Assembly (NCBI RefSeq): GCF_002113885.1
Contig: NW_018408804.1
Span: 183,904 to 247,903, forward strand
Direction: 5' to 3'
DNA length: 64,000 nt
From: Mizuhopecten yessoensis
Lineage: Eukaryota
Shown here: one piece after another, positions 13,495 through 60,104 of the stretch
Position numbering within the stretch: the stretch's first letter is position 1
How the letters are laid out: the number at the start of each line of letters is the position of its first letter
Position numbers and translations under genes: made by a program
Notes under the pieces: generated by a model
The model's input: only the letters and a program-made list of their open reading frames with translations
The model's database searches: none
What the model was told of the DNA's origin: nothing

Positions 13495-13735
13495 ATGTAT
13501 TGTGCTGTTTATGATCACGTGTTGAGTTGTATAATATCGTATTGTATTGTTACGGATGGTAATATATTGTTAAGTATTGCATTGAATTATATTGTATTGT
13601 AATGTATTGTGCTGTTTTTGACGTATTGAGTTGCATGGTATCGTATTGTATTGTTACGTAATGTATATTGTATTGTTACGCATTGTATATTGTATTGTTA
13701 CGTATTGTATATTGTATTGTTACGTATTGTATATC
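13495..13735 (+). repeat. Degenerate (tattg)n microsatellite
   Basis: Directly visible pentanucleotide repeats. Confidence 0.85.
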
Positions 13736-14772
13736 GTTTTTGCGTCTCTCTGGTTCCTGGTGTCGTCTTTCGTTCGTTTTTGCGTCTCTCTGGTTCCTGT
13801 TGTCGTCTTTCGTTCGTTTTTGCCTATTTCTCTGGTTCCTGTTGTTGTCTTTCGTTCGTTTTTGCGCCTCTTTGGTTCCTGTTGTCGTCTTTCGTTCGTT
13901 TTTGCGTCTCTCTGGTTCCTGTTGTCGTCTTTCGTTCGTTTTTGCGTCTCTCTGGTTCCTGTTGTCGTCTTTCGTTCGTTTTTGCGTCTCTCTGGTTCCT
14001 GTTGTCGTCTTTCGTTCGTTTTTGCGTCTCTCTGGTTCCTGTTGTCGTCTTTCGTTCGTTTTTGCGTCTCTCTGGTTCCTGTTGTCGTCTTTCGTTCGTT
14101 TTTGCGTCTCTCTGGTTCCTGTTGTCGTCTTTCGTTCGTTTTTGCGTCTCTCTGGTTCCTGTTGTCGTCTTTCGTTCGTTTTTGCGTCTCTCTGGTTCCT
14201 GTTGTCGTCTTTCGTTCGTTTTTGCGTCTCTCTGGTTCCTGTTGTCGTCTTTCGTTCGTTTTTGCGTCTCTCTGGTTCCTGTTGTCGTCTTTCGTTCGTT
14301 TTTGCGTCTCTCTGGTTCCTGTTGTCGTCTTTCGTTCGTTTTTGCGTCTCTCTGGTTCCTGTTGTCGTCTTTCGTTCGTTTTTGCGTCTCTCTGGTTCCT
14401 GTTGTCGTCTTTCGTTCGTTTTTGCGTCTCTCTGGTTCCTGTTGTCGTCTTTCGTTCGTTTTTGCGTCTCTCTGGTTCCTGTTGTCGTCTTTCGTTCGTT
14501 TTTGCGTCTCTCTGGTTCCTGTTGTTGTCTTTCGTTCGTTTTTGCGTCTCTCTGATTCCTGTTGTCGTCTTTCGTTCGTTTTTGCCTCTCTCTGGTTCCT
14601 GGTGTCGTCTTTCGTTCGTTTTTGCGTCTCTCTGGTTCCTGTTGTTGTCTTTCGTTCGTTTTTGCGTCTCTCTGGTTCCTGTTGTCGTCTTTCGTTCGTT
14701 TTTGCGTCTATCTGGTTCCTGTTGTCGTCTTTTTTTCGATTTTGCCTCTCTCTGGTTCCTGTTGTCGTCTTC
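13735..14772 (+). repeat. Highly homogeneous 40-bp minisatellite (gttgtcgtctttcgttcgtttttgcgtctctctggttcct), ~26 copies
   Basis: Near-identical tandem units. The unit has no A, so it cannot contain a stop codon, which explains ORFs in all three + frames. Confidence 0.97.
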
Positions 14773-14865
14773 TGTGTCAGTGTCTCCCTTTTTCTAAAGT
14801 TGTCTTTTGTTTTGTGTTTGGTACCGATTTGTTTTTTAAGTCTTCAAAACGTAGATAACATAATG

Positions 14866-15022
14866 TTTTTTGTTTATGTTTTACGTCCTATTAACAGCTG
14901 TGGTCATTTGAGGACGTGCCAGGTTTTGGTGGTGGAGGAAAGCCGGAGTTTCCGGAGAAAAACCACCGACCTACGGCCAGTACCTAGCGACTGCTCCACG
15001 TAGGCCTCGAACCCGCGACCTC
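14866..15022 (-). mobile_element. tRNA-derived SINE with V-domain-like core (5'-truncated copy)
   Basis: The reverse complement has B-box ggttcgagg, then core gcagtcgctaggtactggccgtaggtcggtggtttttctccggaaactccggctttcctccacc. Homologous to copies at 39652 and 53260. Confidence 0.8.
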
Positions 15023-15615: not shown

Positions 15616-16986
15616 CGTATTGGTTTTCTGTTTAATCCAGGGGAAATAAACAAAAACGGAAAACACGTGTTTCTAATCTTAACACATAATTTCTTTTTCA
15701 GATGACAATACTTTGAAACAGATTCTTCTTTAAACGACGTAGAACCGGAAATGAAGACGTAATAGATATTTTAACCTTGTTAGTCCATTTATCATAAATC
15801 GATTGGTCGGCACATGCTAACGTGAACATAATTTAACTAAAACTTCTTTGAAATGCAGGTTTGATGTTCCCAGGAGCGCCGCATGTGGCCGAGTGTGTTA
15901 CGTCAGCAGATGAAAATACAGTGCATTGAGCATCATCCCTTTCTTCAGAGGTCGGTCAGAGGTCAAAGGTCACTGGTGGGCAGGAATTAATACAGATCAA
16001 TCTCTAAAGGTTATAGCAGCGGGGTCGCAGAGGTGTTTTTTGCACGACAGGCCACACCCGATACGGCTTATATCACCAGTCGTTTACAGAAACCCCAATT
16101 CATCGCGGACCAAATTCGTATCGATATCACAGTAAGTTTGTAAATTTTTATGTAAAGATACAATTCTTATGAGAAAGGGGTACGGTATCATGAAAATGAT
16201 TATATACAGGTTTTATAAGCTAATTTAATAGCTGTCTACAAGTAAGCTACTTAAGAAAGTTTAAGCTATTAGGAAACTATCTAATATATATTTATATATG
16301 TGAGTTCTCTTTGATATTTTTGAAGCTATTCCGATACCCCAGCAGCGCCTTTTCAGTAGACGATCTTTAATAACGCTTAAAGATTTTATGTGTTTATGTT
16401 TTGTGAATTTCTCGGGGTAATATACAGGTATTTTATATAAAACTGCACAGTTAGTGCTAACCGGCTTGGTTTCGGCTGTATATATGTAAATTGATAACGC
16501 CGTCAGTATTGCCTAAGTATGTTTCCTATGTGTACGAGTTGTGTTTTTCACCGTGATGATACATACGAGATAAATTAAAGGTCAATGTATCGTACTGGAC
16601 TGATCCGTGTAAAATAATATAAGTTAATTCCAATGAAATAGATCAGGATAAATAAATTGGTGACATTTACCGGAACGAGACATCTTACCTACACCTAATC
16701 CCTCGATACAGCTAGCTAGCTATAGGATGTAACACATGTCGGTCACATATATATAAAATGGGTTTTTTATACCATGCTCTGCATTTTCTAGAAAAAGATA
16801 CGAAGCTTACATGGAGGTGACCGGACAATATATAGTTGATGAGTTTCATGCGTTTTATCATGCACTTATATATATTTTTGTATACTTTTCCAGTGGATTC
16901 GGTACCAGAGAGACAGCCGTCTTTGTTCTGAACAGGAGCTAAATGAAACATGTATAGTGTGTTATAACTTCAGTGATGTGGTCCTA

Positions 16987-17371
16987 ATGTCCGTACATCA
17001 AGTGATGTTGACCCAATCCTCAAAACCATGGTTTCCCCCGCCTCAACTTGGCGTTTCCAGGGAAACGTCCGCCGGCAGGTTGTCGTTTATAGTAACGACA
17101 AATACTACGGACTTTACCGAACAGAATACGGAATTCACCGAACACCATTCCTACCTGTTTTATGTGAAGGTGATTCTTATTTTCGTGATAATGGTGTGTA
17201 CTACATTAGGGAATTTACTCAATATCGCAGTGACATTAAAGACTAGGTCACTTAGGACTCCATCCGGGAACTTCATCATTTCCTTGGCAACGGCTGACCT
17301 GATGGTGGGAATTCTTGTGACGTTTTCATTTGTTTCATCTATACAGGACAAATGGGCATTTTCTGACTCAG
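16987..17371 (+). CDS. Class A (rhodopsin-like) orphan GPCR, coding exon 1 (N-terminus, TM1, TM2)
   Basis: ATG at 16987 follows an AG acceptor at 16972-3. NTT sequon; TM1 ...CTTLGNLLNI; TM2 NFIISLATADLMVG; ECL1 WAFSDS; donor G|GTAAGT at 17371/2 (phase 1). The start codon choice is an inference. Confidence 0.9.
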
Positions 17372-17989
17372 GTAAGTTATCGCTTAATTCCGTTAAATCT
17401 ATTGCAGACGTCTGGAAATGTCCTCATCAAAGATGTTATATAGGTCCAAGACTTGCACTGATAAAAAAAATCTTGTTTTCGCTTCTCCGCTTGTTACGTC
17501 CGCTTCCTGTTTCTTATTTCTGTTTTTAATTCGTTCATCGACGATGCAAGTATTAATCTTAATTGTGTTGTATCGCTTTTTACTTAATTTCCTTTTTCAT
17601 ACGGGTATTCCTGTTGTTGTTTTTTTTATCTCAGTTTTAATATTTATTACACGGAAGTAAATTGTGAGATGCGTCGACTTCCTTTTTCGGTCAGAATAAA
17701 TCTAATCGCTGGAAGTATCAGGGGGATTAAACGTGTCACTTACTGTACGAGATTCTTCATTATTTCATTCGTTATGACTCTCAAACATATCTTTAATCGA
17801 ATCTGCATAGCAAACTGCGGACCTCGCTTTCGTAATGAACAGGTGATACAACCACGAATTAACGTAAAAAATAACGATCTCCCAATTACATGTGTCTGTC
17901 TATATCTGTATACAATACGAAGTAAAGCTATTTCTGTTATAATCTGCTTTGAATTACGTGAAGCCTTTTGATATCAACTGGTTTTTTGT

Positions 17990-19945: not shown

Positions 19946-20643
19946 TCTGTAAAGCTGTCGGATTTATATTTTTCTACGCAACGTCTCTATCGATGTGGAA
20001 CCTACTGGTCCTTACCATTGACCGATGGGTTTCGGTCACACGGCCAATGAAGTATGTATCCTGGATGACCAACCGGACTTCCTACAAAATTATCGGCCTT
20101 GTTTGGCTCGGCGTCCTACTTATAGACTTCCCTATGTTATTACCCGGCGTCGGCGATGTTTATTACATAGAGGGCGCCTTTTTATGCAGTCCTAATTGGC
20201 GGGTAAACTTGATTTACACTTTCTTGCTTGTCGCGGTGCATCTTTTACCATCTTTTATTCTAGTGCTAGCATTTAACCTTAGACTCTACTGTATTTCTAG
20301 GAAACATGTCAAGGAAATGGAACTTCTCCAGATACAAAGTCAAACTGCTGTTAAGCCATCTTCCATAAAACCAAAATTGGTGATAACAACGATAGTGATG
20401 GCGTTTGAGATTTCCTGGATGCCGTTTTTAGTTGCCGAGATTATCCGACTTTTCTCGCCGTCTTCTATTAGTGTACCAGTGTCATTTATCGTAAGCTGGG
20501 TTGCGGTTAGCAACAGTCTCATGAATTCTGTTATCTACACATGTTTGAACCGGAAGTTCCGGCATGGCATCGTCACACTGTTCCGGTGCAAGGACATCGG
20601 CACAGCAGAGCTGACGGGATATGTTGATAGTAATTTCGTGTAG
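19946..20643 (+). CDS. Class A orphan GPCR, coding exon 2 (TM3-TM7, C-terminus)
   Basis: Acceptor tttccattccag|. The phase-1 join gives WAFSDSVCKAVGF...LTIDRW, restoring C3.25. TM4 W, ECL2 C, TM5 LLP, TM6 FEISWMP, TM7 SNSLMNSVIY, helix 8 NRKFR. AATAAA signals at ~20698 and ~20803. Confidence 0.93.
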
Positions 20644-26987: not shown

Positions 26988-27066
26988 CAATCTGATTAAA
27001 ATCATATCCTACATTCTCCTAACGTGATACAGGTAGAGAACGTAGGATATGATTTTAATCAGATTG
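26988..27066. mobile_element. 79-bp hairpin MITE with perfect 9-bp TSD (actgttcat)
   Basis: 25-bp perfect TIR caatctgattaaaatcatatcctac / gtaggatatgattttaatcagattg; actgttcat on both sides. Confidence 0.9.
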
Positions 27067-27573
27067 ACTGTTCATTATCCTGAATGTATTGGCAAGATAA
27101 TAGTTCTTTATAAAGAAGAGGCCACTTTTCGGCCTGGGGTCAGTTCTAAATTTATATAACTCCATAAAAAAGGTTTCAGATGCTACATTTTTTTTCAATG
27201 GTCTCCAAAATTTATAGTGTAGGTAAGTGTTTCTTTTACTTACTCTTTAATTATCACCTGTTTTGCTGGTATAATATCAAAGGAAAATTTTTACCGAACC
27301 AGCTGGATCAAATTTTTCTGGCATCTGAAAATCATGTTGTACAAGCTGCAATACGCACAAATAAACAGCCAATGCAAATGTCAGATTCTGAGATATATTG
27401 TAGATTGTAGGATGTCTGATATGTATTATCCCATTCTGGGACATCCCAGTCCCTCTGTTAGAAGCGTAGCTTATCTCCACATACATCCTACATCCCAATG
27501 TGCCGCGGTAAGATGACCTACGGTGTATTTGGTAGGACGTCTAATGTCTAAGCCTAAGGTACTGTTGAAATGT

Positions 27574-27709
27574 CTAGCTTGTCTTCAGATGCCGGATCTC
27601 TTTCTCCAGTACAGTGGTGACGCGGATGGCCTCATCCGCCTTGTCTCCCCCGATACGTCTCAAGGCAGCGAGGGCCGCCTCACGTACATTAGAAATAATA
27701 TCATTCCGC
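27574..27709 (-). CDS. TIR/EF-hand-like/HEAT protein, last coding exon (final HEAT repeat)
   Basis: Acceptor tttttcag|, phase 2 matching the previous exon; (W)RNDIISNVREAALAALRRIGGDKADEAIRVTTVLEKEIRHLKTS*. Confidence 0.9.
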
Positions 27710-28817
27710 CTGAAAAAATATAATCATACAGTACAAAACAACTTGTTTTGATGTCCCATCACAAACTGATAACAAAAGTCAATTAAGTGACTTTATCAGG
27801 GTAAGACTACCAACATTCCAGCTCATTAAGTACTGTATTTACCCTAATAACCCCCACCCCCATCCATTGACTGGTCAAAGTATCCCATTGCTCAAATATT
27901 GATTTATACCTTATATTAGTTCGAAAACTGACTTAATTATGGGTATATTTGTTGGATAGGTTTTGTTTTTTCTGTAATCAGTTTTCCTCTACATCGCTAA
28001 TAAAGCACCAAGGGCACAGAACATTTGTATGAGACCAGATACAGCAGGTGTTACCAATTTCTGTCTTCAAGTGTTTTGTCATGGAATACTGGATATTATT
28101 TATCCCCTTTAACCCTTATTAAACATTTAAACATTCTGTATTACATAAGTTGTTTTATTGATTGTTCAAATATGTTTCATTGAAATGTTACTCTCCTTTC
28201 AAAATTATGTTAGCTGTCAGCTAAAATAGATTTTTTTCAACTAAGTAAAATATCTAAAAATGAATTGGCATAACTTTAAAAAAAATCTTATCATTATTCA
28301 GAGTACTGAATTTTGATTTTTCTGAAAATGTTTTCCTTTAAATAAAATTTTCCTTATCACCTTGAACTTTTACCTTGACACTACAGAGACGTCATAAATC
28401 TACAAGATTAATCATAATATGCATCACATTACTTTCAGAAATGGGTAACTAAAATTCCAAAAAGCAATATTTAACAAAATTTGCAAATGATACAATAAAT
28501 CATCTTGCCTATTTAAGTAGTAAAATATTTTACACCTGTTGATACATCGAACACGAATCTAACAGTGTCCATGACTCAGGACCTGGAAGAACAAATTTGT
28601 TCAGGGTATTCCCAAGTTTGACCAAATCTCATCAGGAATGAAGTAGCTATAGCATTGACAAAGCGTGAACATATGAATGGAAGGCAATACACTTCCAATA
28701 CCTTGTCAAGACATGATAAAAATAACTGATTTTACAAGACTGGCAAGGTCTACACTATAAACCAATCCAGTGACAAGGGGAGACAACTGCGATATGTTAA
28801 ACCATATTGTAACTGAC

Positions 28818-29055
28818 CATAAATCCACTAGCTTCTCTATAGCAACGGTTGCTTTCATGACACCAAGGGAAAGACAACTGGCCTCGCGGACGATTCTGTC
28901 TCTGGAGTGAAGGCACTGCATGACGTATTTGACTGTCTTGTCGTCATTGGCTCCCGTTCTGGCCAATGAAATGATGGCTACAGCCTGCACATTTGGATCT
29001 TTGTCGGACAACAAGTCTCGTAGAGCATCAATGACTGTTGCACTCTTGAACTTTC
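28818..29055 (-). CDS. TIR/EF-hand-like/HEAT protein, exon 8 (HEAT/PBS-lyase-like repeats)
   Basis: acag| ... |gtcagt; (G)KFKSATVIDALRDLLSDKDPNVQAVAIISLARTG...LHSRDRIVREASCLSLGVMKATVAIEKLVDL(W). Confidence 0.92.
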
Positions 29056-29202
29056 CTGTAAGTTAAGACATTGAAGTTTTAATACAACTAAAAAACATCC
29101 CTACTTAACTCTTTTACCATAGCACTGATATTTTAGATTTATTTTCTCTTAGTCCTCTTATTGTAGCTTTAATATCATTGACCTTGACCTTGTCATTACA
29201 AA

Positions 29203-29281
29203 GGGGCCGTGGTGGCCAAGTGGTTAAGGTGTCTGACATTCTGCTACCACTAACCCTCCACCACTGGGTCGGGGGTTCGTA
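29203..29281 (+). mobile_element. Truncated tRNA-derived SINE head
   Basis: ggggccgtggtggccaagtggttaagg...ggttcg is near-identical to the SINE head at 53260. Confidence 0.75.
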
Positions 29282-29360
29282 AGTCTGAAGGACACTGTTT
29301 ACATTGGCTACCCATAACCTTGTTTTATCTCAATTATTAATTACATGGAATTTTAATTAC

Positions 29361-29492
29361 CTAAGTTTTCAATGGCCTGGACACGAACAGAGGAGTCCAT
29401 TTTGAAGACTTCTCGCATGGCGTAACTCTCTCTGGCCTGGTCCTGTATTCGCATCCACAGAGGACGGACCTGGTCGTCAATCGTACAGAACT
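29361..29492 (-). CDS. TIR/EF-hand-like/HEAT protein, exon 7
   Basis: ctttgcag| ... |gtaatt, phases 1/1; (E)FCTIDDQVRPLWMRIQDQARESYAMREVFKMDSSVRVQAIENL(G), the start of the first HEAT repeat. Confidence 0.9.
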   Translation of the reverse strand, partial: SSVRLTTRSVLCGCEYRTRPERVTPCEKSSKWTPLFVSRPLKT

Positions 29493-30461
29493 CTGCAAAG
29501 CAGGATGACATTGTATAAAACAGAAACTCTTCAAAAATCAGCTATTAAAATGTACCTGGTATCCCCACTCGGGTCAGGACACAATAAGGCAGCTGTTCAC
29601 CGAGGAAGAAACGTTTGGTATCTCACTACTCCCTGTGGGGAGTGGCTTTAATACTGGTTGATCATAAAATGATGAATGGAATTTCAGCTCACACATCTTT
29701 ACTTTGCATGCCTTACTTTGTATACGTGTATTTTATGTCATAACACTTGCACTTTTTCCTCTTGTGTACATAAGCACAATTTGCTGTTACTATGGAAACG
29801 CCATATTAACACTATTGGTAGTTAAAAGGTGCCGATGACAATTTTCGACTCCCTATTAGCGTTTATCTCACTTTCGCAGAAATCATTTGAAAAGCTCCCT
29901 GCTTATGATAAATAGGACCTGAATTTGAATCCCGAGTCAGCAGAGATGTTTTTGTGAAAATTATGATATTAAATATGATATACATGTATATATCTCGTTT
30001 ACATATATACATGTAGTTGATTCCTTTAGTTAATGAGCCAGTACAAGTAACTCCGGATAAACAAATTCTAAATAAAGAAAAACTTAATTATTGGAGAAAA
30101 CATGCAGTGGCTAGAACTAACTGCCTTAAAGGACAATTTAACATGAGTGCTTCATTTGTATATAAGTTTCTCTATCAAGGAATGTAAACAGCCCAAGGTC
30201 TACTAGTTTCTTTCTTCACATACACACACAGGCAAAAAGAAATCCTGACCTGATTTTCACCTGAACTTAAGTCATTTCACATGAAAAACTTTTCAGATCA
30301 GTTTCATGTCAATTACCTGAAAAAATATGATTTGATTTCAGGCGAAATTTTGCCTGTGTAGGTAACAGTTATTAATCCAATACAATACCATACATTAAGT
30401 ACTACATAAAAGGATACAATATAACTGAATGTGTTAAAATAAATAACAACACTACAATAGA

Positions 30462-31400
30462 GGATATCCTCTCACACTAGGCTATCCTCTAACACTCCGA
30501 TATCCTCTAACACTCCGATATCCTCTTACACTCCGATATCCTCTTACACTCAGATATCCTCTTACACTCAGATATCCTCTTACACTCCGATATCCTCTAA
30601 CACTCCAATATCCTCTTACACTCAGATATCCTCTCACACTCCGATATCCTCTAACACTCCGATATCCTCTCACACTCCGATATCCTCTTACACTCCGATA
30701 TCCTCTCACACTCCGATATCCTCTCACACTCCGATATCTTCTCACACTCCGATATCCTCTCACACTCCGATATTCTCTAACACTAGGCTATCCTCTTACA
30801 CTCCGATATCCTTTAACACTAGGCTATCCTCTCACACTCCGATATCCTCTAACACTCCGATATCCTCTCACACTCCGATATCCTCTCACACTAGGCTATC
30901 CTCTTACACTCCGATATCCTCTCACACTAGGCTATCCTCTTACACTCCAATATCCTCTCACACTAGGCTATCCTCTTACACTCCGATATCCTCTTACACT
31001 CCGATATCCTCTCACACTAGGCTATCCTCTTACACTCCGATATCCTCTAACACTCCGATATCCTCTCACACTAGGCTATCCTCTAACACTCCGATATCCT
31101 CTCACACTCCGATATCCTCTCACACTAGGCTATCCTCTAACACTCCGATATCCTCTCACACTAGGCTATCCTCTTACACTCCAATATCCTCTCACACTAG
31201 GCTATCCTCTTACACTCCGATATCCTCTTACACTCCGATATCCTCTCACACTAGGCTATCCTCTTACACTCCGATATCCTCTAACACTCCGATATCCTCT
31301 CACACTAGGCTATCCTCTAACACTCCGATATCCTCTCACACTCCGATATCCTCTCACACTAGGCTATCCTCTAACACTCCGATATCCTCTCACAGTCAGA
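30462..31400 (+). repeat. 18-bp minisatellite (atcctctcacactccgat / ...actaggct variant), ~52 copies, intronic
   Basis: Directly visible. Confidence 0.95.
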
Positions 31401-31756
31401 CATCCCCTCACTCTTGGACACCTTCTAATGCTTAGACATCCTCTTATGCTTCGATATACTCTCAGACTCTAATATCCTCTCACTAATATCCTTTTTCACT
31501 AGACAGAATCATTAGGCAGAGTTAAGCAGGGTGGCGGAGGCCAAGTCCGGGTTTTGGAAGATACATGTATATTTCAGAGTTAATAAAGAATAAAGGAAAA
31601 TAATTGCATACCCTCGTAAGCATTATCCTTTATCTAACTGATGGCATTTCTACATGTACTCCTATGTCAACTAAAACCCATTAGATACTTAACTGATCCT
31701 TGACTAACGTCAACCACCAGATGGGGTCATGTGATTATATAATAAGCTAAACAAAC

Positions 31757-31899
31757 CTGTGTAGTTGTCCTTGTTGACCATCTCCTCTGTGCTGATGTCC
31801 AGTTCTCTATGAAGTATCGCTAATAACCACTCAGTGTCATCTTCTCCAAACGTCTTATCAAAGTCCTCCTTAAAGTCGGTCAGTATTTGACCTCTAAAC
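31757..31899 (-). CDS. TIR/EF-hand-like/HEAT protein, exon 6
   Basis: ttgttttag| ... |gtttgt, phases 2/1; (R)FRGQILTDFKEDFDKTFGEDDTEWLLAILHRELDISTEEMVNKDNYT. Confidence 0.88.
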
Positions 31900-32457
31900 C
31901 TAAAACAAGGACAATTCCATTTAACCTTGACACAGAGAGAGAAGAGGTCAATGACCTTGACACAGAGAGACAAGAGGTCAATGACCTTGACATTCAGATT
32001 GATAAGAAGTCAATAAAACAACACAGTGACGTTTTAACTTGTGGTGAATTGATTGACAAGATTCCTTGATAAGTGATGACTTGATTTAATGGTGATTGGA
32101 TTAATGAGGTCTTAGGTGACCACTGGACTTCATACAATTGTCCATTATTAAGGTATTCCATGTATAATGAAATTGGCCAACATCGGGAAACTTCGTAATC
32201 TGGGAATTCCCCCTAATGGTGACTTCATATTTGGTATGAGTTTTTGCCGTTGGGGAAACCCTGCTTGTTAACAAATGGCAACTGTTCTTTATTTAAAAAT
32301 ATGTATTACCAGGTATACATGGATTTCCTTAATTCAACCAATCAGAAACTTTGCATTTTATTGAAGAACTGGGCTTTCTGCTGATCAGTTTATGCTGTTT
32401 ATTGAAGAACTGGGCTTTCTGCTGATCAGTTAATGCTGTTTAACCATCAACACTTGC

Positions 32458-32617
32458 CTTTCCCACGCAACATTGACAGATTTTCCAAATGATCTTGCCC
32501 AGTAAGCTATACCATCCTCCAGAAACAGTTTGGACTCTTTTTCACTGAATTTCCGAGAAATAGATCGGTTTAGCATTCTCCTTGATTTTACATTTGTCTC
32601 TGGCTTTGCTGTGTTTC
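32458..32617 (-). CDS. TIR/EF-hand-like/HEAT protein, exon 5 (ends at a GC donor)
   Basis: tttttatag| ... AG|GCAAGT, phases 1/2; (G)NTAKPETNVKSRRMLNRSISRKFSEKESKLFLEDGIAYWARSFGKSVNVAWE(R). Confidence 0.85.
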
Positions 32618-33100
32618 CTATAAAAAACAAACCAGAATATTAACAGAACAGTGAATCTTATAGATCTACCAACTTGTTAATTTCTCTTGCTTTCATTGTA
32701 TGAGTTAAAATCACATGAAACATATGTGGATTTTTTTTTCTCATTTGTTGTGCTCAAAAATATTTGTACACATGCAAGTAATTAACATTGCATTGTACTA
32801 TAATTAAGCAATACAACACAAAGTTATCATATCTTGAAAAGCCTATTTGAAGCTTGTTATCTTACACACAAAAAAATATTTGTGTTTCCACCATTATCCT
32901 TCACAAAATATAGGGTAGGTACTATATTTAGGTAGGTAATTTTTTTATTTTTGAATTTATTTTTACTAGGCTTATTTGGAGCAGCAGTTCTTACCAAAGC
33001 AGTGAATATCACTAAATGCCAATTAAAGAATGAGAGTAGTCAAACAATCTAGGCCAGGTAGGGTTAGCAGAAACACAAGGGCCGTTTTATTTGGTCCTAC

Positions 33101-33225
33101 CTTTATTCTCCTTCTCTTTGATTTCCTCCAGCAGTTTGAACACTTTGTTGGTTATGTCCTTCAAGTTGTCAGCAAGGCTTTCTGTTGACAAGGTGAACCA
33201 TTCAAAGCCAGCTAGTTCAAGACGC
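33101..33225 (-). CDS. TIR/EF-hand-like/HEAT protein, exon 4 (end of TIR domain, helical linker)
   Basis: gtttccag| ... |gtagga, phases 2/1; (M)RLELAGFEWFTLSTESLADNLKDITNKVFKLLEEIKEKENK. Confidence 0.88.
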
Positions 33226-33798
33226 CTGGAAACACAACACATGTTTCAATAAATTAATGTAACTGGTTTAGAATGTTTTCACGAGAGTTATCTCCCTTGA
33301 AACACTCCAAACCAGTGAGTACCACGCACCTTCTACATTCCAAGATAACACAGTTTAACTTATAGAGTGATGGTTACCTATAACTAACAGATTGTAATTT
33401 GGTATTGCAGATGTTACACTGTTTGTAGTAATTGATTAATAGGATTCATAAAAAACCCAAGGAGAAGTGGTTAGTTTCCACTAGGAGTGAAGGTTGTTTT
33501 TTCTATATTGATAGTGTTGAATTGTCCAGAAATTACAATTTTAAAGTAAAAGTACACAATGGGGGGTTGGTAGAGTGAAAGGGTTCAGAATGACAGTCAA
33601 GAGGTTCAGGTGGAAGGTTGTGGGCACAGTTGGTGCAATGGTGTGTTTGTTAGTTGGGTTTGTAATTTTGTTTGAAGGGAGCTCGAGAGGTATGGAAATG
33701 AGGAGAGGACCTTTGACGTCAGTGGAATGTTGATGGACAGGGCTATGGGAGTCTTGAACCCTGACTCAGGAGAGGGGAACATTACTACCAATACTTAC

Positions 33799-33944
33799 AT
33801 TCCGTTATCCATCAGGTTGAGGAGTTCTTGGTTTGGCAGCAGTGCCACAGGAAGGATAGACTTATTGGACACATAGGCTAAAGCCAACTGGTCCTGACAA
33901 ATCTTAGACTGGACAGATTCCCTACTCATCACAAACATGAAAAT
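33799..33944 (-). CDS. TIR/EF-hand-like/HEAT protein, exon 3 (TIR betaC-alphaC-betaD)
   Basis: gtttacag| ... |gtaagt, phases 0/2; IFMFVMSRESVQSKICQDQLALAYVSNKSILPVALLPNQELLNLMDNG. Confidence 0.92.
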
Positions 33945-33972
33945 CTGTAAACAAACAAGCGATGAGGGTCAC

Positions 33973-34740
33973 TGTGTTGTCAGGCTTACAACAAGTGTTG
34001 TCTGGGTTACAACTAGTGTTGTCTGGCTTACAACTAGTGTTGTCAGGGTTATAACTAGTGTTGTCTGGCTTACAACTAGTGTTGTCAGGGTTACAACTAG
34101 TGTTGTCAGGGTTATAACTAGTGTCATCTGAGTTATAACTAGTGTTGTCAGGGTTACAACTAGTGTTGTCTGGGTTACAACTAGTGTTATCCGGGTTACA
34201 ACTAGTGTTGTCAGGGTTATAACTAGTGTTGTCAGGGTTATAACTAGTGTTGACAGGGTTACAACTAGTGTTGTCTGTGTTACAACTAGTGTTGTCTGTG
34301 TTATAACTAGTGTTGTCAGGGTTACAACTAGTGTTGTCAGGGTTACAACTAGTCTTGTTTGAGTTACAACTAATGATGTCAGGGTTGCAACTTATGTTTT
34401 CTGTTACAACTCCTGATATCAATGTTATACAACTAATGTTGTCAGGGTTACAACTAGTGTTGTTTGGCTTACAACAAGTGTTGTTTGGCTTACAACTAGT
34501 GTTGTCAGGGTTACAACTAGTGCTGTCAGGGTTACAATTACAAGTTTTGTTTTCTGTTACAACTAGTGTTATCTGGGTTACTTTTCATGTTGTCAGGGTT
34601 ACTACTTTAGTGACATCAGAATTTTAACTGTGTTGCCATGGATACAACTACTGTAGTCAGGGTTATGGCCAGTGTTGTCAGGGATAAAACTAGTGTTGTC
34701 AAGGTTACAACTAGTGATCTAAATGTTATAACTGTGTTTT
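33973..34740 (+). repeat. 21-bp minisatellite (actagtgttgtcagggttaca), intronic, decaying toward 34740
   Basis: Directly visible; source of the spurious SCNPDNT-repeat ORF. Confidence 0.93.
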
Positions 34741-34835
34741 CAGGAATACTAATTAGTATATTAAGAGTTGTCCGAGTTTCTGCTGGTGTAGTTGTCATGG
34801 TCATCATATTAATTACCAGACCAGAGAAAACTCAC

Positions 34836-34939
34836 ACTGCTGTCCACGACAGCCTGTCCTATCCTGGCAAAGATGTCAGCTCCACTCATTATGTCTTCAG
34901 TCTCCAGCCACGCCCGGATTCCCTCCCCAACCATCTTTT
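34836..34939 (-). CDS. TIR/EF-hand-like/HEAT protein, exon 2 (TIR betaB, BB loop, alphaB)
   Basis: cgtttacag| ... |gtgagt, phases 1/0; (E)KMVGEGIRAWLETEDIMSGADIFARIGQAVVDSS. Confidence 0.92.
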
Positions 34940-35833
34940 CTGTAAACGTACAAAATTGGAACCACAATGATTTACAAATACATGTATGTATTAGTATCAA
35001 TACTTTATGTTTCTATATATTAAATCTTCTTCATCCTGTGTATTGCTTTTTTTTATTCTTGTAAAAGGTTTTTTATTCGTTGCAATGTTCAGGTGGGAAT
35101 ATTTGAACTGTGACAAAAAAAATTGACACCACGAGCAAAATGGAATAGTGATTTGTGACTAAATGGACGGTTGTGGGTAATTGATTAAGTTAAAACTCAT
35201 TCCTAGATATATGTAATGTTTTATGTGTCATAACGTTATTTGCTTTTCATCACTCCTGAAAACTTAGAAACATCAGGCTGTGTCGAATAATCCGTGTTTT
35301 AGTATATTGACTCTGGCCTCACACCAGATAATACTTCTACTGTATGTCACAAAATGTCAAAAGTCTGGTGTTGGGGCCAGAGGGAAATCGAAAGGACGAG
35401 GCCCAACACAACATTGGACAAGCAAACCATCCTCGAGATTCCAGGAGTTCTACCAAACTTCTCTGCACCCCTGGACCAGTGAAATATGTCATGATGAAAG
35501 CATGGGCTCTGTATGTGCCACGTTGTGGATGTTACAAGAAGACAAGTTGATCCCTTGATGTACATCAAAAGAATTGTGTGGAAACATAACAGTAAAATTC
35601 ACCAGAACTGAAGTCAGGTGTTGGCGATTTTTAATTTTTCTCCTTTTTTTCACCTGAAACCAATCCAAAAGCTTACTCAAGGTGCATACAATTTTGTCAT
35701 AAAATATTCAAGAGGGTGGTGCGGAGAATGTAAGTTATTTTTTATTATTGTATTATAACCCCTGAATTTGGAGGATGGCAGCAAACAAGAAAATAAAGTT
35801 CAAAATGTATATTAGCAATGTCCTCAAACATAC

Positions 35834-35966
35834 CACGCAGTTTTTTGGTGATGTCCTCATCAGCCTGGTCGTAAGATATCATCACATCCTTGATCGTTCC
35901 AACTGTGGTCAGCGCCAGTTTGGCCTGCACACGTGGAGTGGTCAGTTTACTCATATTGACCAATAC
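35834..35966 (-). CDS. TIR/EF-hand-like/HEAT protein, first identified coding exon (TIR betaA DVMISY; candidate ATG at 35954)
   Basis: atttatag| ... |gtatgt; VLVNMSKLTTPRVQAKLALTTVGTIKDVMISYDQADEDITKKLR. Confidence 0.88.
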
Positions 35967-36087
35967 CTATAAATATTTTGGAAGTAAGATGTAAATGGTC
36001 ACCTGTATATGTTGTAGACTAATTATAATTAATAATTACAAAATGTATAAGGATATAGGAACAGATTGCCTCAGTATAGTGTAACAT

Positions 36088-36145
36088 GCGGGTGGTCACC
36101 CATCCAACTACTGACCATTCTCGAGGTTGCTGAACAAGTGAGCAG
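36088..36145 (-). pseudogene. 5S rRNA-derived fragment (5S pseudogene or SINE3 head)
   Basis: The reverse complement gttcagcaacctcgagaatggtcagtagttggatgggtgaccacc resembles the 5S internal control region (gttaagcaa...ggttagtacttggatgggtgaccgcc). Confidence 0.6.
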
Positions 36146-49514: not shown

Positions 49515-52500
49515 CTTTTGTTTTAAGCTCGTGTCGTACTTTTGCTTTGTACACGTGCGCTACTCTTGTAATGTACATGTTCAGGACTTTAGTTTTGTAC
49601 ACGTGGGCTACCTTTGTTTTGTACACGTGGGCTACCTTTCTTTTGTACACGTGTTACCTTTGTTTTTTACACGTGGGCTACCTTTGTTTTGTTCACGTGG
49701 GCTACCTTTGTTTTGAACACGTGGGCTACCTTTTTTTTTACACGTGGGCTACCATTGTTTTGTACACGTGGGCTACCTTTATTTTGTACACCTGCACTAC
49801 TCTTGTTTTGTGCACGTGCGCTACTTTTGTAATGTACACGTGCAATACTCTAGTTTTGTACACGCGCGCTACACTTGTTTTGAACACGTGCGCTTCACTT
49901 GTTTTGTACACGTGCGCTACACTTGTTTTGAACACGTGCGCTTCACTTGTTTTGTACACGTGCGCTACACTTGTTTTGTACACGTGGGCTACTTTTGTTT
50001 TGTACACGTGTTACCTTTGTTTTGTACACGTGGGCTACCTTTGTTTTGTACACCTGCACTACTCTTGTTTTGTACACGTGCGCTACTTTTGTAATGTACA
50101 CGTGCGATACTCTAGTTTTGTACACGCGCGCTACACTTGTTTTGAACACGTGCGCTTCACTTGTTTTGTACACGTGCGCTACACTTGTTTTGTACACGTG
50201 CGCTACACTTGTTTTGTACACGTGGGCTACTTTTGTTTTGTACACGTGCGCTACACTTGTTTTGTACACGTGCGCTACACTTGTTTTGTACACATGGGCA
50301 ACTTTTGTTTTGTACACGTGTGCTACACCTGTTTTGTACAAGTTCAGTACTTTAGTTTTGTACACGTGTGCTACACTTGTTTTGTACATGTGGGCTACCT
50401 TTGTTTTGTACACGTGGGCTACCTTTGTTTTGTTCACGTGCGCTACACTTGTTTTGTACACGTGTTAATTTGGTTTTGTACACGTGGGCTAAACTTGTTT
50501 TGTACACGTGCGCTACACTTGTTTTGCACACATGCACTACACTTGTTCTGTACACGTGCGCTACACTTGTTTTGTACACGTGCGCTACACTTGCTTTGAA
50601 CACGTGCGCTACGCTTGTTTTGTACACAATCGCTATACTTGTTTTGCACACTTGCGCTACACTTGTTTTGTCCACGTGTTAATTTGGTTTTGTACACGTG
50701 GGCTAAACTTGTTTTGTACACGTGCGCTACACTTGTTTTGTACACGTGCGATACTCTTGTAATGTACATGTTCAGTACTTTTGTTTTGTACACGTGAGAT
50801 ACACTTGTTAGGTACTCGTGGGCTACCTTTGTTTTGTACACGTGGTCTACCTTTGTTTTGTACACCTGCACTACTCTTGTTTTGTACACGTGCGCTACTT
50901 TTGTAATGTACACGTGCGATACTCTAGATTTGTACACGTGCGCTACACTTGTTTTGAACACGTGCGCTACACTTGTTTTGTACACGTGCGCTACACTTGT
51001 TTTGCACACATACGCTACACTTGTTTTGTACACGTGTTACTTTTGTTTTGTACACGTGCGCTACTCTTGTTTTGTACACGTGCGCTACAGTTTTTTGTAC
51101 ACGTGTTACTTTTGTTTTGTACACGTGCTCTACTCTTGTTTTGTACACGTGCGCTACACTTTTTTGTACACGTGCGCTACACTCGTTTTGTACACGTGCG
51201 CTACACTTGTTTTGTACACTTGGGCAACCTTCTTTTGTACACGTGCGCTACCCTTGTTTGTACACGTGCGCTACACTTGTTTTGTACACGTGCGATACTC
51301 TTGTTTTGTACACGTGGGCACTTTTGTTTTGTACACGTGTGCTACACCTGTTTTGTACAAGTTCAGTACTTTAGTTTTGTACACGTGTGCTACACTTGTT
51401 TTGTACACGTGGGCTACCTTTGTTTTGTACACGTGGGCTACCTTTGTTTTGTACACGCGGGCTACCTTTGTTTTGTACACGTGTTACTTTTGTTTTGTAC
51501 ACGTGGGCTACCTTTGCTTTTTACACCTGCACTACCCTTGTTTTGTACACGTGCGCTACACTTGTTTTGTACACGTGCGCTACACCTGTTTTGTACACGT
51601 GCGCTCCACTTGTTTTGTACACGTGCGATACTCTTGTTTTGTACACGTGCGATACTCTTGTTTTGTACACGTGGGCAACTTTTGTTTTGTGCACGTGTGC
51701 TACTCCTGTTTTGAACAAGTTCAGTACTTTAATTTTGTACACGTGTGCTACATTTGTTTTGTACACGTGGGCTACCTTTGTTTTGTACACGTGTTACTTT
51801 TGTTTTGTACACGTGGGCTACCTTTGTTTTGTACATGTGGGCTACCTTTGTTTTGTATACCTGCACTACTCTTGTTTTGTACACGTGCGCTACACTTGTT
51901 TTGTACACGTGCGCTACACCTGTTTTGTACACCTGCGCTACACTTGTTTTGTACACGTGGGCAACTCTTGTTTTGTACCCGTGCGCTACACTTGTTTTGT
52001 ACACGTGCGCTACACTTGTTTTGTTCACGTGCGATTCTCTTGTTTTGTACACGTCGGCAACTTTTGTTTTGTACACGTGTGCTACACCTGTTTTGTACAC
52101 TTGCGCTACACTTGTTTTGTACACGTGCGCTACACTTGTTTTTCACACATGCGCTACACTTGTTTTGCACACATGCGCTACACTTGTTTTGTACACATGC
52201 GCTACACTTGTTTTGTACACATGCGCTACCTTTGTTTTGTACACGTGTGCTACACCTGTTTTTTACACGTGCGCTGCACTTGTTTTGTACACATGCGCTA
52301 CACTCGTTTTGTACATGTGTGCTACACTTGTTTTGAACACGTGCGCTACTCTTGTAATGTACATGTTCAGTACTTTAGTTTAGTACACGTGGACTACCTT
52401 TGTTTTGTACACGTGGCCTACCTTTGTTTTGTACACCTGCACTACTCTTGTTTTGTACAATTGCGCTACACTTGTTTTGTACACGTGCGCTACACCTGTT

Positions 52501-53258
52501 TTGTACACGTGCGCTACACTTGTTTTGTACACGTGGGCAACTTTTGTTTTGTACACGTGCGCTACACTTGTTTTGTACACGTGCGATACTCTTGTTTTGT
52601 ACACGTCGGCAACTTTTGTTTTGTACACGTGTGCTACACCTGTTTTGTACACTTGCGCTACACTTGTTTTGTACACGTGCGCTACACTTGTTTTGCACAC
52701 ATGCGCTACACTTGTTTCGTACACGTGCGCTACACTTGTTTTGTACACGTGCGCTACACTTTTTTTACAATTGCGCTACACTTGTTTTGTACATGTGTGC
52801 TACACTTGTTTTGAACACGTGCGCTACTCTTGTAATGGACATGTTCAGTACCTTAGTTTTGTACACGTGGGCTACACTTGTTTTGTACATGTGTGCTACA
52901 CTTGTTTTGTACACGTGCGCTACACTTGTTTTGTACACGTGCGCTACACTTGTTTTGTACACGTGCGCTACGCTTGTTTTGTACACAATCGCTATACTTG
53001 TTTTGCACACTTGCGCTACACTTGTTTTGTAAACGTGCGCTACACTTGTTTTGTACATGTGTGCTACACTTGTTTTGTACACGTGCACTACTCTTGTAAT
53101 GTACATGTTCAGTACTTTAGTTTTGTACTCGCCTTTGACACTTGTTTTGTACACGTGTTACTTTTGTTTTGTACACGTGTTACTTTTGTTTTGTACACGT
53201 GTTACTTTTGTTTTGTACACGTGGGCTACTTTTGTTTTGTACACGTGCGCTACTCTTG
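49515..53258 (+). repeat. 24-bp satellite array (ttgttttgtacacgtgcgctacac), ~155 copies
   Basis: Directly visible; source of all overlapping ORFs at 49.4-53.3 kb. Confidence 0.97.
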
Positions 53259-53259
53259 T

Positions 53260-53452
53260 AGGGCCGCGGTGGCCAAGTGGTTAAAGCCTCTGACATTCTG
53301 CTACCACTAGCCCTGCACCACTGGGTCGCAGGTTCGATACCTCCGTGGGGCAGTCGCCAGGTACTGGCCGTAGGTTGGTGGTTTTTCACCGTGAACTCCG
53401 GCTTTCGTCGACCACCAAAACCCGGCTCCTCCTTAAAACACAAACAAACAAC
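53260..53452 (+). mobile_element. tRNA-derived V-domain SINE, near full-length
   Basis: A-box tggccaagtgg, B-box ggttcgatacc, core ggtggtttttcaccgtgaactccggctttcgtcgacc, (caaa)n tail. Confidence 0.85.
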
Positions 53453-58830: not shown

Positions 58831-60036
58831 CCACGAGTTTACTGATGACCACGAAACCACTAGTTCAATGATATGTACGGAGACGTCCCCCTAAACCACG
58901 AGTTTACTGATGAGCACGGAGACGTCCAATTAAACCACGAGTTTACTGATGAGCACGAAGACGTCCACCTAAACCACGAGTTTACTGATAAGCACGGAGA
59001 CGTCCACCTAAACCACGAGTTTACTGATGAGCACGGAGACGTACACCTATTCCACGAGTTTACTGATGAGCACGGAGACGTCCACCTAAACAACGAGTTT
59101 ACTGATGAGCACTGAGACGTACACCTACACAACGAGTTAACTGATGAGCACGGAGACGTCAACCTAAGCAACGAGTTTACTGATGAGCACGGAGACGTAC
59201 ACCTATTCCACGAGTTTACTGATGAGCACGGAGACGTCCACCTAAACCACGAGTTTACTGATAAGCACGGAGACGTCCACCTAAACAACGAGTTAACTGA
59301 TGAGCACGGAGACGTCCACCTAAGCCACGAGTTTACTGATGAGCACGGAGACGTCCACCTAAACAACGAGTTTACTGATGAGCACGGAGACGTCCACCTA
59401 AGCCACGAGTTTACTGATGAGCACGAAGACGTCCACCTAAACAACGAGTTAACTGATGAGCACGGAGACGTCCACCTAAACCACGAGTTTACTGATAAGC
59501 ACGGAGACGTCCACCTAAACAACGAGTTTACTGATGAGCACGGAGACGTCCACCTAAGCCACGAGTTTACTGATGAGCACGGAGACGTCCACCTAAACAA
59601 CGAGTTTACTGATGAGCACGGAGACGTCCACCTAAGCCACGAGTTTACTGATGAGCACGAAGACGTCCACCTAAACAACGAGTTAACTGATGAGCACGGA
59701 GACGTCCACCTAAACCACGAGTTTACTGATAAGCACGGAGACGTCCACCTAAACAACGAGTTTACTGATGAGCACGGAGACGTCCACCTAAGCCACGAGT
59801 TTACTGATGAGCACGGAGACGTCCACCTAAACAACGAGTTTACTGATGAGCACGAAGACGTCCACCTAAACCCAAGTTAACTGATGAGCACGGAGACGTC
59901 CACCTAAGCCACGAGTTTACTGAAGAGCACGGAGAATTCCACCTAAACAACGAGTTTACTGATGAGCACGGAGACGTCCACCTAAGCCACGAGTTAACTG
60001 ATGAGCACGGAGACGTCCACCTAAACCACGAGTTTA
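58831..60036 (+). repeat. 39-bp minisatellite (cacgagtttactgatgagcacggagacgtccacctaaac), ~30 copies, with a 234-bp higher-order period
   Basis: Directly visible; the pattern of variant units recurs every 6 units. Confidence 0.95.
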
Positions 60037-60104
60037 TTTGTGAAAAGCACAAAGCCTAACAAATGTACCGGTGACGGCATTCTTATGGGAACTAACTGCG
60101 CTTC

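What the first reader, a model, noticed from the sequence alone, without database searches (positions are those of the whole stretch)
27574..35966. Hidden nine-exon gene encoding an unusual TIR + Cbl-type EF-hand + HEAT-repeat protein
Seen in sequence: exons 35966-35834, 34939-34836, 33944-33799, 33225-33101, 32617-32458, 31899-31757, 29492-29361, 29055-28818 and 27709-27574 join with matching phase at all eight junctions into a stop-free ORF (434 aa from ATG 35954). The ORF track shows only fragments. Established knowledge: DVMISY...GIRAWLE..DI.SG..IF..I..AV..S..F.FVMS.ESV.S..C...L.LA....K.ILPV is the TIR (TIR_2-like) pattern, and L.D.D..V...A...L and VREAA..AL..IG are HEAT/PBS-lyase repeats. 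Inference: this is a cytosolic TIR protein with no LRR, death or SAM domain and with the helical repeats C-terminal, roughly the reverse of SARM1's ARM-SAM-TIR order. It is a candidate uncharacterised innate-immune sensor or adaptor.
Basis: partly seen in the sequence, partly recalled or inferred. Interest (0 to 1): 0.8.

Follow-up and report, generated by a model that had tools for sequence, protein, structure and literature searches.

The report
Scallop TIR–EF-hand–HEAT gene, catalytic Glu lost
The nine exons form a real, expressed Yesso scallop gene that public databases already list as an uncharacterised TIR protein; it is a bivalve-only duplicate of a widespread invertebrate TIR–EF-hand–HEAT family and has lost the glutamate that such TIR enzymes need, so it probably acts as a non-enzymatic partner or regulator.

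Summary
The nine minus-strand exons join in phase into a 434-codon ORF. RNA contigs from two studies plus raw RNA reads confirm six of the eight junctions. The other two rest on homology.

The gene is not hidden. The joined protein is identical (434/434) to RefSeq XP_021374767.1 / UniProt A0A210PUT4, "uncharacterized protein LOC110464067" of Mizuhopecten yessoensis.

The architecture is confirmed:
- TIR_2 scores 60 bits, and its closest solved fold is the human SARM1 TIR.
- An EF-hand-like pair has the Cbl TKB EF-hand as best structural match (Z 8.7). The Cbl_N2 profile is below threshold.
- Four PBS-type HEAT repeats follow (HEAT_2, 69 bits).

The family is not rare. It occurs in molluscs, annelids, a nemertean, echinoderms, a hemichordate and amphioxus; a 2026 preprint's table adds a brachiopod and a tunicate. 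The same preprint lists this protein and reports cADPR synthesis by the lancelet member's TIR.

New here: this gene belongs to a bivalve-only paralog clade with three changes.
- The catalytic Glu is Gln (Q94).
- The aromatic residue four positions before it is aliphatic.
- The N-terminal myristoylation motif is missing.

The Glu-bearing, MG-initiated paralog lies elsewhere in the same genome. This copy is most likely a non-catalytic TIR scaffold or regulator. An immune role is untested.

The parts
35834..35966 (-). The ATG is at 35952-35954. It encodes residues 1-40 and the start of the TIR beta-A strand (KDVMISYDQ). The exon is preceded by an AG, and the RNA contigs carry about 18-26 nt more upstream, so a further 5' UTR segment or exon exists.
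34836..34939 (-). Exon 2, TIR (Pfam TIR_2 profile positions 23-51).
33799..33944 (-). Exon 3, TIR alpha-C region (TIR_2 positions 54-92). It holds the motif SKICQDQLALAY.
33888..33890 (-). Codon of Gln94, at the position of the catalytic glutamate of NAD-cleaving TIR domains. Ile90 (33900-33902) replaces the aromatic residue four positions before it.
33101..33225 (-). Exon 4, the end of the TIR domain and the long linker helix (residues 141-165 in the model).
32458..32617 (-). Exon 5, the disordered linker and the start of the EF-hand-like domain. It has a GC splice donor.
31757..31899 (-). Exon 6, the EF-hand-like domain including the degenerate loop DISTEEMVNKDN.
29361..29492 (-). Exon 7, the end of the EF-hand-like domain and the first HEAT helix.
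28818..29055 (-). Exon 8, HEAT repeats (HEAT_2, E 5.7e-12 for the exon alone).
27574..27709 (-). Exon 9 coding part, the last HEAT repeat, with the stop codon at 27574-27576.
27054..27573 (-). Inferred 3' UTR. The RNA contigs extend about 504-506 nt beyond the stop if they are colinear with the genome, and an ATTAAA lies at 27054-27059.
   Evidence: inference from contig lengths

Best explanation
This is gene LOC110464067 of the Yesso scallop. It encodes a soluble 434-aa cytosolic protein with three modules: an N-terminal SARM1/bacterial-type TIR domain, an EF-hand-like pair most like the one in the Cbl TKB domain, and four PBS-type HEAT repeats. It belongs to a family conserved across Lophotrochozoa, Ambulacraria and non-vertebrate chordates. 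Ordinary members of that family carry the catalytic glutamate and an N-terminal myristoylation motif, and the TIR of one of them (lancelet) is reported to make cADPR. The scallop gene in this window is a bivalve-only duplicate. In it the glutamate is glutamine (the classic inactivating change), the aromatic residue four positions before it is aliphatic, the SYSH motif is changed and the myristoylated N-terminal extension is gone. The EF-like and HEAT modules stay well conserved. Shown: gene structure, expression, architecture, family, substitutions and clade. Inferred: the protein no longer cleaves NAD+ and works through protein contacts, as a TIR scaffold, regulator or decoy. It may act on the Glu-bearing paralog encoded elsewhere in the same genome, or on other TIR proteins.
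For: Gene and expression: (the joined model is 434/434 identical to P0190, which is XP_021374767.1 / A0A210PUT4). Domains: TIR_2 60.4 bits and HEAT_2 69.3 bits on the whole protein. AF2 model: pLDDT 80.5. Foldseek: alphaRep/HEAT hits at E about 5e-5, and the best TIR match is the human SARM1 TIR with TM 0.69-0.76. Middle domain alone: pLDDT 86. Cbl TKB tops both Foldseek (prob 0.99, E 0.03) and the independent VIA search (Z 8.7, then calmodulin at 7.0). Family. Catalytic column: Gln in 9 of 9 rows of a bivalve-only clade and Glu in 31 of 31 other rows. The clade has SH-aLRT 100. Gln94 aligns with the Glu of Cat1 (CWDEL) and with E77 of SPARTA TIR-APAZ. The preprint's Table S2 independently lists GLN 94 for A0A210PUT4 and GLU 127 for the scallop paralog A0A210Q866. 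Its Table S4 lists the lancelet member as active with cADPR produced, and it uses SARM1 E642Q as the dead control. The Glu paralog in the same genome starts MGSKPS. An N-terminal MG start occurs in 19 of 31 Glu-type rows, 18 of them with Ser at position 6. It occurs in 1 of 9 Gln-type rows, and that row lacks the Ser. Conservation against the oyster Gln-type protein is HEAT 74%, EF-like 61%, TIR 54%.
Against: No enzyme assay exists for this protein or for any Gln-type member. The activity of the lancelet TIR comes from one preprint that overexpressed an isolated domain in E. coli. An invariant Asp93 sits next to Gln94, and an unconventional mechanism or another substrate cannot be excluded. 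No interaction, calcium-binding or infection-response data exist. The partner is a guess. AF2 inter-domain geometry was not assessed.
Confidence: 0.6

Rival explanations
1. The protein is still an enzyme. The Gln-type TIR keeps NAD+ cleavage or another TIR chemistry (for example 2',3'-cNMP synthesis from nucleic acids), using Asp93 or other residues, and the EF-hand and HEAT modules gate it much as ARM gates SARM1.
For: The TIR fold is intact and SARM1-like. Asp93, Ser88, Cys91 and the LALAY helix are invariant or nearly so across both types. The TIR has stayed 47-54% identical within the Gln clade since protobranch bivalves split off.
Against: The Glu-to-Gln change is used as the catalytically dead control (SARM1 E642Q). 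The preprint states that mutating this Glu invariably abolishes NAD+ processing. Cat1 also carries an Asp directly before its catalytic Glu in the alignment (from my own knowledge, plant TIRs do too and still need the Glu). The aromatic at -4 is also lost.
Confidence: 0.2
2. It is a classical TLR or IL-1R pathway adaptor. It would be a cytosolic TIR protein that bridges activated Toll-like receptors to downstream kinases, independent of its paralog.
For: Its non-catalytic TIR resembles vertebrate adaptor TIRs in lacking the Glu. MAL TIR is among the fold matches. Bivalves have very large TLR and TIR repertoires (PMC10279657 abstract).
Against: It has no death domain or other known signalling hand-off module. 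The nearest TIR folds are SARM1, plant and bacterial ones rather than TLR or MyD88. No expression-on-challenge or interaction data were found.
Confidence: 0.15
3. It is a decaying duplicate or an annotation artefact with no function.
For: It has lost several motifs kept by the parent family.
Against: The ORF is intact and the spliced transcript appears in several independent RNA data sets. Orthologs of the same length are kept in scallops, oysters, mussels and Solemya, with 66-74% identity in the HEAT module. One oyster cluster alone holds 120 assembled sequences.
Confidence: 0.03

Closest known systems
Invertebrate TIR-EF-hand-HEAT family (cluster of UniProt A0A2G8L436 in Hurieva et al. 2026, bioRxiv 10.64898/2026.04.20.719644; members are annotated 'uncharacterized protein', 'TIR domain-containing protein' or 'tirA-like')
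   Same: Full-length colinear homology (37-44% identity to most non-bivalve members) and the same three modules in the same order. This very protein is listed in the cluster.
   Different: It is a bivalve-only paralog with Gln instead of the catalytic Glu, Ile instead of the aromatic at -4, SYDQ instead of SYSH, no MG...S start and a TIR that begins at residue 24. The Glu-type members have 38-240 residues before the TIR.
SARM1 (ARM-SAM-SAM-TIR NADase)
   Same: Its TIR is the closest solved fold (TM 0.69-0.76). An alpha-solenoid repeat module sits in the same polypeptide as the TIR.
   Different: The domain order is reversed and there are no SAM domains. The repeats are PBS-type HEAT rather than ARM. 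Gln sits where SARM1 has E642. It is not an ortholog.
Cbl TKB domain EF-hand (Pfam Cbl_N2)
   Same: It is the best structural match of the middle domain by two independent aligners. Weak Cbl_N2 profile hits recur at the same place in homologs (P0106 at 22.8 bits, P0014 at 20.7 bits).
   Different: The profile is below the gathering score in this protein (13.8 against 22 bits). No four-helix bundle or SH2 flanks it. The loop lacks the canonical Gly6 and Glu12. Z 8.7 is only moderate for a helical domain.
Soybean SRC4 (NTD-TIR-SNOR-EF-hand resistance protein, PMC13575729)
   Same: A TIR is followed by an EF-hand module in a cytosolic immune protein. In SRC4 the EF-hand tunes TIR output with Ca2+.
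   Different: It comes from an unrelated plant lineage and has no HEAT repeats. Whether the SRC4 TIR carries the catalytic Glu was not checked here. The similarity is analogy only.
Plant paired TIR-NLRs RRS1/RPS4 (PMC13732033)
   Same: It gives a possible logic for the pair: a TIR protein working in a heteromer with a catalytic TIR partner.
   Different: There is no NB-ARC or LRR here. Pairing of the two scallop paralogs is untested, and they are not adjacent in the genome (contigs C5477 and C4651).

Membership tests
TIR domain (Pfam TIR_2, PF13676) | Profile match above the gathering score | tested here: met
   60.4 bits against a 28-bit cutoff over residues 24-138. Exons 2 and 3 hit successive profile segments.
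TIR domain (Pfam TIR_2, PF13676) | Flavodoxin-like beta-alpha fold that superposes on solved TIR domains | tested here: met
   AF2 pLDDT is 85-90 over the domain. Matches are SARM1 TIR at E 4e-4 and TM 0.69-0.76, then RUN1, MAL and Cat1.
Catalytic (NAD+-cleaving or cyclising) TIR enzymes | Glutamate on helix alpha-C in the active-site position | tested here: not met
   Gln94 aligns with the Cat1 Glu and with SPARTA E77. The preprint's structural alignment gives GLN 94.
Catalytic (NAD+-cleaving or cyclising) TIR enzymes | Aromatic residue four positions before the Glu (W in SARM1, plant TIRs and Cat1; Y/F/H in 30 of 31 Glu-type family members) | tested here: not met
   Ile90 in this protein and Ile or Leu in all nine Gln-type rows. 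That this aromatic defines the class comes from my own knowledge of SARM1 W638 and the plant WCxxE motif.
Catalytic (NAD+-cleaving or cyclising) TIR enzymes | Measured NAD+ consumption or cADPR-isomer production | not testable with these tools
   Only the lancelet Glu-type member has been assayed (Table S4 of 10.64898/2026.04.20.719644).
HEAT repeats, PBS-lyase type (Pfam HEAT_2, PF13646) | Profile match above the gathering score and an alpha-solenoid fold | tested here: met
   69.3 bits against 27.7. The homolog P0014 hits alphaRep structures at E 2e-34 by sequence, and this protein's model hits them at E about 5e-5 by fold. Eight helices in four pairs span residues 301-433.
Cbl N-terminal EF-hand-like domain (Pfam Cbl_N2, PF02761) | Profile match above the gathering score | tested here: not met
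   13.8 bits, E 0.09, against a 22-bit cutoff. Among the homologs scanned, only P0106 reaches 22.8 bits.
Cbl N-terminal EF-hand-like domain (Pfam Cbl_N2, PF02761) | EF-hand pair fold that superposes on the Cbl TKB EF-hand | tested here: met
   The top 11 Foldseek hits are all Cbl TKB (prob 0.97-0.99, E 0.03-0.07). In the VIA wide search the top hit is 6xar_A at Z 8.7, rmsd 3.3 and 87 residues aligned. This is moderate strength only.
Cbl N-terminal EF-hand-like domain (Pfam Cbl_N2, PF02761) | TKB context: a four-helix bundle before the EF-hand and an SH2 after it | tested here: not met
   No Cbl_N or Cbl_N3 profile hit. The flanking modules are TIR and HEAT.
Canonical Ca2+-binding EF-hand | A 12-residue loop with acidic ligands at positions 1, 3 and 5, Gly at 6 and Glu at 12 | tested here: inconclusive
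   The loop is D-I-S-T-E-E-M-V-N-K-D-N: positions 1 D, 3 S, 5 E, 6 E, 8 V, 12 N. It is degenerate, and Ca2+ binding is untested.
SARM1 orthologs | ARM-SAM-SAM-TIR order with tandem SAM domains | tested here: not met
   No SAM hit, and the TIR is N-terminal.
Invertebrate TIR-EF-hand-HEAT family (A0A2G8L436 cluster) | Colinear full-length homology and the same three modules | tested here: met
   All nine exons map colinearly onto members. All ten homologs scanned carry TIR_2 and HEAT_2. Tree placement agrees. The protein is listed in the cluster in Table S2.

The most novel reading that the evidence does not exclude
In bivalves the soluble, catalytically dead Gln-type protein and the myristoylated, Glu-bearing paralog form a working pair. 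The dead copy would use its conserved EF-hand-like and HEAT modules to sense a signal (Ca2+ or a pathogen or host ligand). It would then license or inhibit the membrane-anchored cADPR-producing TIR of the paralog. That would be an animal counterpart of plant sensor/executor TIR pairs.
Probability: 0.12. Interest if true: 0.7.

Novelty: new variant of a known kind. Interest (0 to 1): 0.4.

Why it matters
TIR domains are now seen as enzymes in bacteria, plants and, according to a 2026 preprint, many animals. This family couples a SARM1-like TIR to EF-hand-like and HEAT modules in many invertebrate phyla, and no full-length member has been studied. A natural Glu-to-Gln paralog kept beside the Glu-bearing copy across bivalves, from Solemya to scallops, oysters and mussels, gives a ready-made comparison. 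It lets one ask what the catalytic activity is for, and how non-catalytic TIR proteins arise from enzymes. The practical value is modest: the gene is already annotated and nothing yet ties it to immunity.

Tried and rejected
- Exon-by-exon Pfam scans gave nothing for exons 1 and 4-7.
- The ESM Atlas look-up with exon 6 gave only low-recognition bacterial rows, so I discarded it.
- The word search with exon 8 found only three exon-sized metagenome fragments because of its length filter. Their contigs were too short to help.
- There is no second copy or tandem paralog in the window.
- Literature: no paper text names the gene or its orthologs by locus id. No paper pairs 'TIR-DC' with 'HEAT repeats'.
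- The ecTIR-DC classification (Gerdol et al. 2017, Dev Comp Immunol) is not held. I could not check whether this family has an ecTIR-DC number. The three papers that cite that scheme describe other families.
- Rejected readings: SARM1 ortholog (no SAM, reversed order), Cbl relative (no TKB context, profile below threshold) and pseudogene (intact, expressed, conserved).
- The joined exon model was never handed to a search or folding tool. Exons were joined only inside scripts, to check the frame and to compare with the stored database protein. All whole-protein steps used the identical public protein P0190 by reference.


Full report
**Observation**

The nine proposed exons lie on the minus strand exactly as listed. 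They total 1317 nt, and every junction keeps the reading frame. The only stop is the last codon, and the first Met is at 35954, which gives 434 residues. All acceptors are AG. All donors are GT except exon 5, which has a GC donor.

I laid two sets of RNA contigs and two raw RNA-seq runs on window 29361-35360.
- Spliced contigs of 1840 and 1850 nt, from two different studies, carry exons 2 to 7 joined at precisely the proposed borders.
- One raw-read run (X20) gives 6-9 junction reads for each of the five joints. The other (X23) laid only two reads, one of them across joint 6-7.
- The exon 5 intron can only be read as GC-AG.
- A loose end at the exon 2 acceptor, present in contigs and in seven raw reads, is the 3' end of exon 1.

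They are supported in three ways. The exon translations fall colinearly on homologs with exactly one residue (the split codon) between them. The contig lengths fit. The joined model matches the database protein (below).

The contigs hold about 18-26 nt more than exon 1 at their 5' end and about 505 nt beyond the stop. So there is a further 5' UTR piece and a 3' UTR that probably ends near an ATTAAA at 27054-27059. That last point is inference.

**How the whole protein was handled**

The joined sequence was not handed to any search or folding tool.
- Per-exon Pfam placed exons 2 and 3 on successive parts of TIR_2. It placed exon 8 on HEAT_2 (E 5.7e-12) and exon 9 weakly on HEAT_PBS. Exons 1 and 4-7 gave nothing useful.
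- The word search with exon 8 saw only exon-sized fragments.
- I therefore used the one exhaustive search with exon 8. It returned proteins of 400-680 aa that all carry TIR_2 plus HEAT_2.
- Searching again with the oyster member P0014 returned P0190. This is 'uncharacterized protein LOC110464067 [Mizuhopecten yessoensis]', with accessions OWF40248.1, XP_021374767.1, XP_021374768.1 and UniProt A0A210PUT4.

So the window is Yesso scallop DNA and the gene is already annotated. All whole-protein steps below use P0190 by reference.

**Anatomy**

On the whole protein TIR_2 scores 60.4 bits (residues 24-138) and HEAT_2 scores 69.3 bits. Cbl_N2 reaches only 13.8 bits against a 22-bit cutoff. An AlphaFold2 model built on a 40-sequence family alignment has mean pLDDT 80.5. 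It shows these parts:

| Residues | Feature |
|---|---|
| 23-135 | TIR fold |
| 141-165 | long helix |
| 167-192 | disordered stretch |
| 193-296 | compact helical domain |
| 301-433 | eight helices forming four HEAT repeats |

Foldseek against the PDB matches the C-terminus to alphaRep and thermostable PBS-type HEAT proteins. It matches the N-terminus best to the human SARM1 TIR (TM 0.69-0.76), then to RUN1, MAL and Cat1.

The middle domain folded alone has pLDDT 86. Its top Foldseek matches are all Cbl TKB domains (prob 0.97-0.99, but E only 0.03-0.07), followed by ordinary EF-hand proteins. The independent VIA search of 48,161 chains also ranks a Cbl TKB first (6xar_A, Z 8.7, rmsd 3.3, 87 residues). 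Calmodulin (7.0) and DCN1 PONY domains (about 6) follow. Weak Cbl_N2 profile hits recur at the same place in two homologs, one just above threshold.

Membership of the Cbl family is not established: there is no four-helix bundle and no SH2. The loop (D-I-S-T-E-E-M-V-N-K-D-N) is degenerate, with no Gly6 and Asn at position 12. Ca2+ binding is open.

**The family**

Proteins with this architecture occur in these groups:
- bivalves, gastropods, cephalopods and a chiton
- annelids and a nemertean
- crinoids, sea stars, sea urchins and a sea cucumber
- a hemichordate and amphioxus

The preprint's table adds a brachiopod and a tunicate. I saw none from vertebrates, arthropods, nematodes or cnidarians, but that is only a failure to find. 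All are named 'uncharacterized', 'TIR domain-containing' or 'tirA-like'.

[quoted passage not shown] The row gives TIR 22-154, an EF_hand domain at 200-283 and TPR-clan repeats at 298-419, within the cluster represented by A0A2G8L436. Its Table S4 records the lancelet member A0A8J9VAE2 (my P0126) as active and producing cADPR in E. coli. So the architecture is neither hidden nor rare, and one member's TIR has been assayed. No full-length member has been studied, and the preprint's text does not discuss the family.

**What is particular about this copy**

In the family alignment the residue at the catalytic-glutamate position is Glu in 31 of 31 rows outside one clade. It is Gln in all nine rows of that clade: scallops, oysters, mussels and the protobranch Solemya.

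That the column is the catalytic one rests on three lines.
- phmmer aligns Gln94 with the Glu of Cat1 (CWDEL) and with E77 of SPARTA TIR-APAZ.
- The motif parallels the plant WCxxE and the SARM1 W638...E642. This comes from my own knowledge and from the SARM1 sequence in Table S4.
- The preprint's structural alignment independently reports 'GLN 94' for this protein and 'GLU 127' for the second scallop gene A0A210Q866.

The same nine rows share further changes.
- They replace the aromatic four residues upstream (Y/F/H in 30 of 31 others) by Ile or Leu.
- Eight of the nine change SYSH to SYD or SYE plus a variable residue. Solemya has SYSN.
- They lack the long N-terminal extension. In 19 of 31 Glu-type rows that extension starts with MG, and 18 of these have Ser at position 6, which is the N-myristoylation consensus.

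A maximum-likelihood tree puts the nine Gln rows in one clade (SH-aLRT 100) on a long stem inside the molluscs. The bivalve Glu-type proteins (Pecten, Pinctada) sit apart with other molluscs.

The scallop genome itself holds the Glu-type gene on another contig (G000:C4651:600827-608489). Its exons read MGSKPS... and SKYCQDEVALAY.

Within the Gln clade the HEAT module is the best kept (74% scallop against oyster, 66% against Solemya). The EF-like domain follows (61% and 38%), then the TIR (54% and 47%). Intact length, expression and this conservation argue against decay.

**Mechanism**

Shown: a real, spliced, expressed gene; its three-module architecture; its place in a conserved family; and the loss of the catalytic Glu, the neighbouring aromatic and the acylation motif in a bivalve-specific duplicate.

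From established knowledge: mutation of this Glu, including Glu-to-Gln, abolishes NAD+ processing in all TIR enzymes tested (statement and E642Q control in the preprint).

Inferred: the protein is a non-catalytic TIR that acts by protein contacts. It would work in the cytosol rather than at a membrane, with its conserved HEAT and EF-like modules as the likely binding or sensing surface. Its partner could be the Glu-type paralog (a sensor/executor or inhibitor pair) or other TIR proteins. I give the non-catalytic scaffold or regulator reading about 0.6. Retained enzymatic activity gets about 0.2 and a classical TLR-pathway adaptor about 0.15. Nothing found here links the gene to infection.

**Verdict**

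The claims of a hidden gene and an unusual architecture are not right: the gene is annotated, the family is catalogued, and a member's TIR has been assayed. The new point is the bivalve-only Gln paralog beside a Glu paralog. That is worth a bench test but is of moderate interest.

Noticed in passing
window 30463-31483 and 33974-34744: Two long minisatellites lie inside introns of the gene: an 18-bp unit x 57 copies in intron 6 and a 21-bp unit x 36.5 copies in intron 2. Their long open frames in the ORF list are repeat artefacts. Low-depth RNA contigs touch the second array.
   Followed up: partly
G000:C4651:600827-608489 (+), loci L003-L008: This is the Glu-type paralog of the same family in the scallop genome (UniProt A0A210Q866 by the preprint's table). 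It has about ten exons, an MGSKPS start and SKYCQDEVALAY in the TIR.
   Followed up: partly
window 16957-17529 and 19993-20643 (+): Two ORFs match the N- and C-terminal halves of the rhodopsin-family 7TM receptor profile (7tm_1, E 3e-9 and 2.6e-20). This is probably one two-exon GPCR gene downstream of (3' to) the TIR gene, on the opposite strand.
   Followed up: no
window 13631-15003 and 49493-53310 (+): These stretches are open in several overlapping frames, with only low-complexity profile hits (Wound_ind, Cornifin). They look like coding-like tandem or low-complexity repeats rather than genes.
   Followed up: no
window 58860-61852 (-): Three consecutive ORFs of 324, 353 and 220 aa have no Pfam match. 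They are unexplained and could be a mobile element or an unannotated gene.
   Followed up: no
family alignment A1 (N-termini): 19 of 31 Glu-type family members start with MG, and 18 of these have Ser at position 6. Three gastropod long forms start MGNC. This suggests N-myristoylation (plus palmitoylation) and membrane anchoring of the ancestral-type proteins. I saw no mention of this in the preprint sections I read or in my term searches of it.
   Followed up: partly
window 35967-36120 (-): Exon 1 is preceded by a good acceptor (TTTATAG), and the RNA contigs carry about 18-26 nt more 5' sequence. RefSeq has two transcript accessions for one protein. An upstream non-coding exon or alternative 5' UTR is likely but was not mapped.
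   Followed up: no
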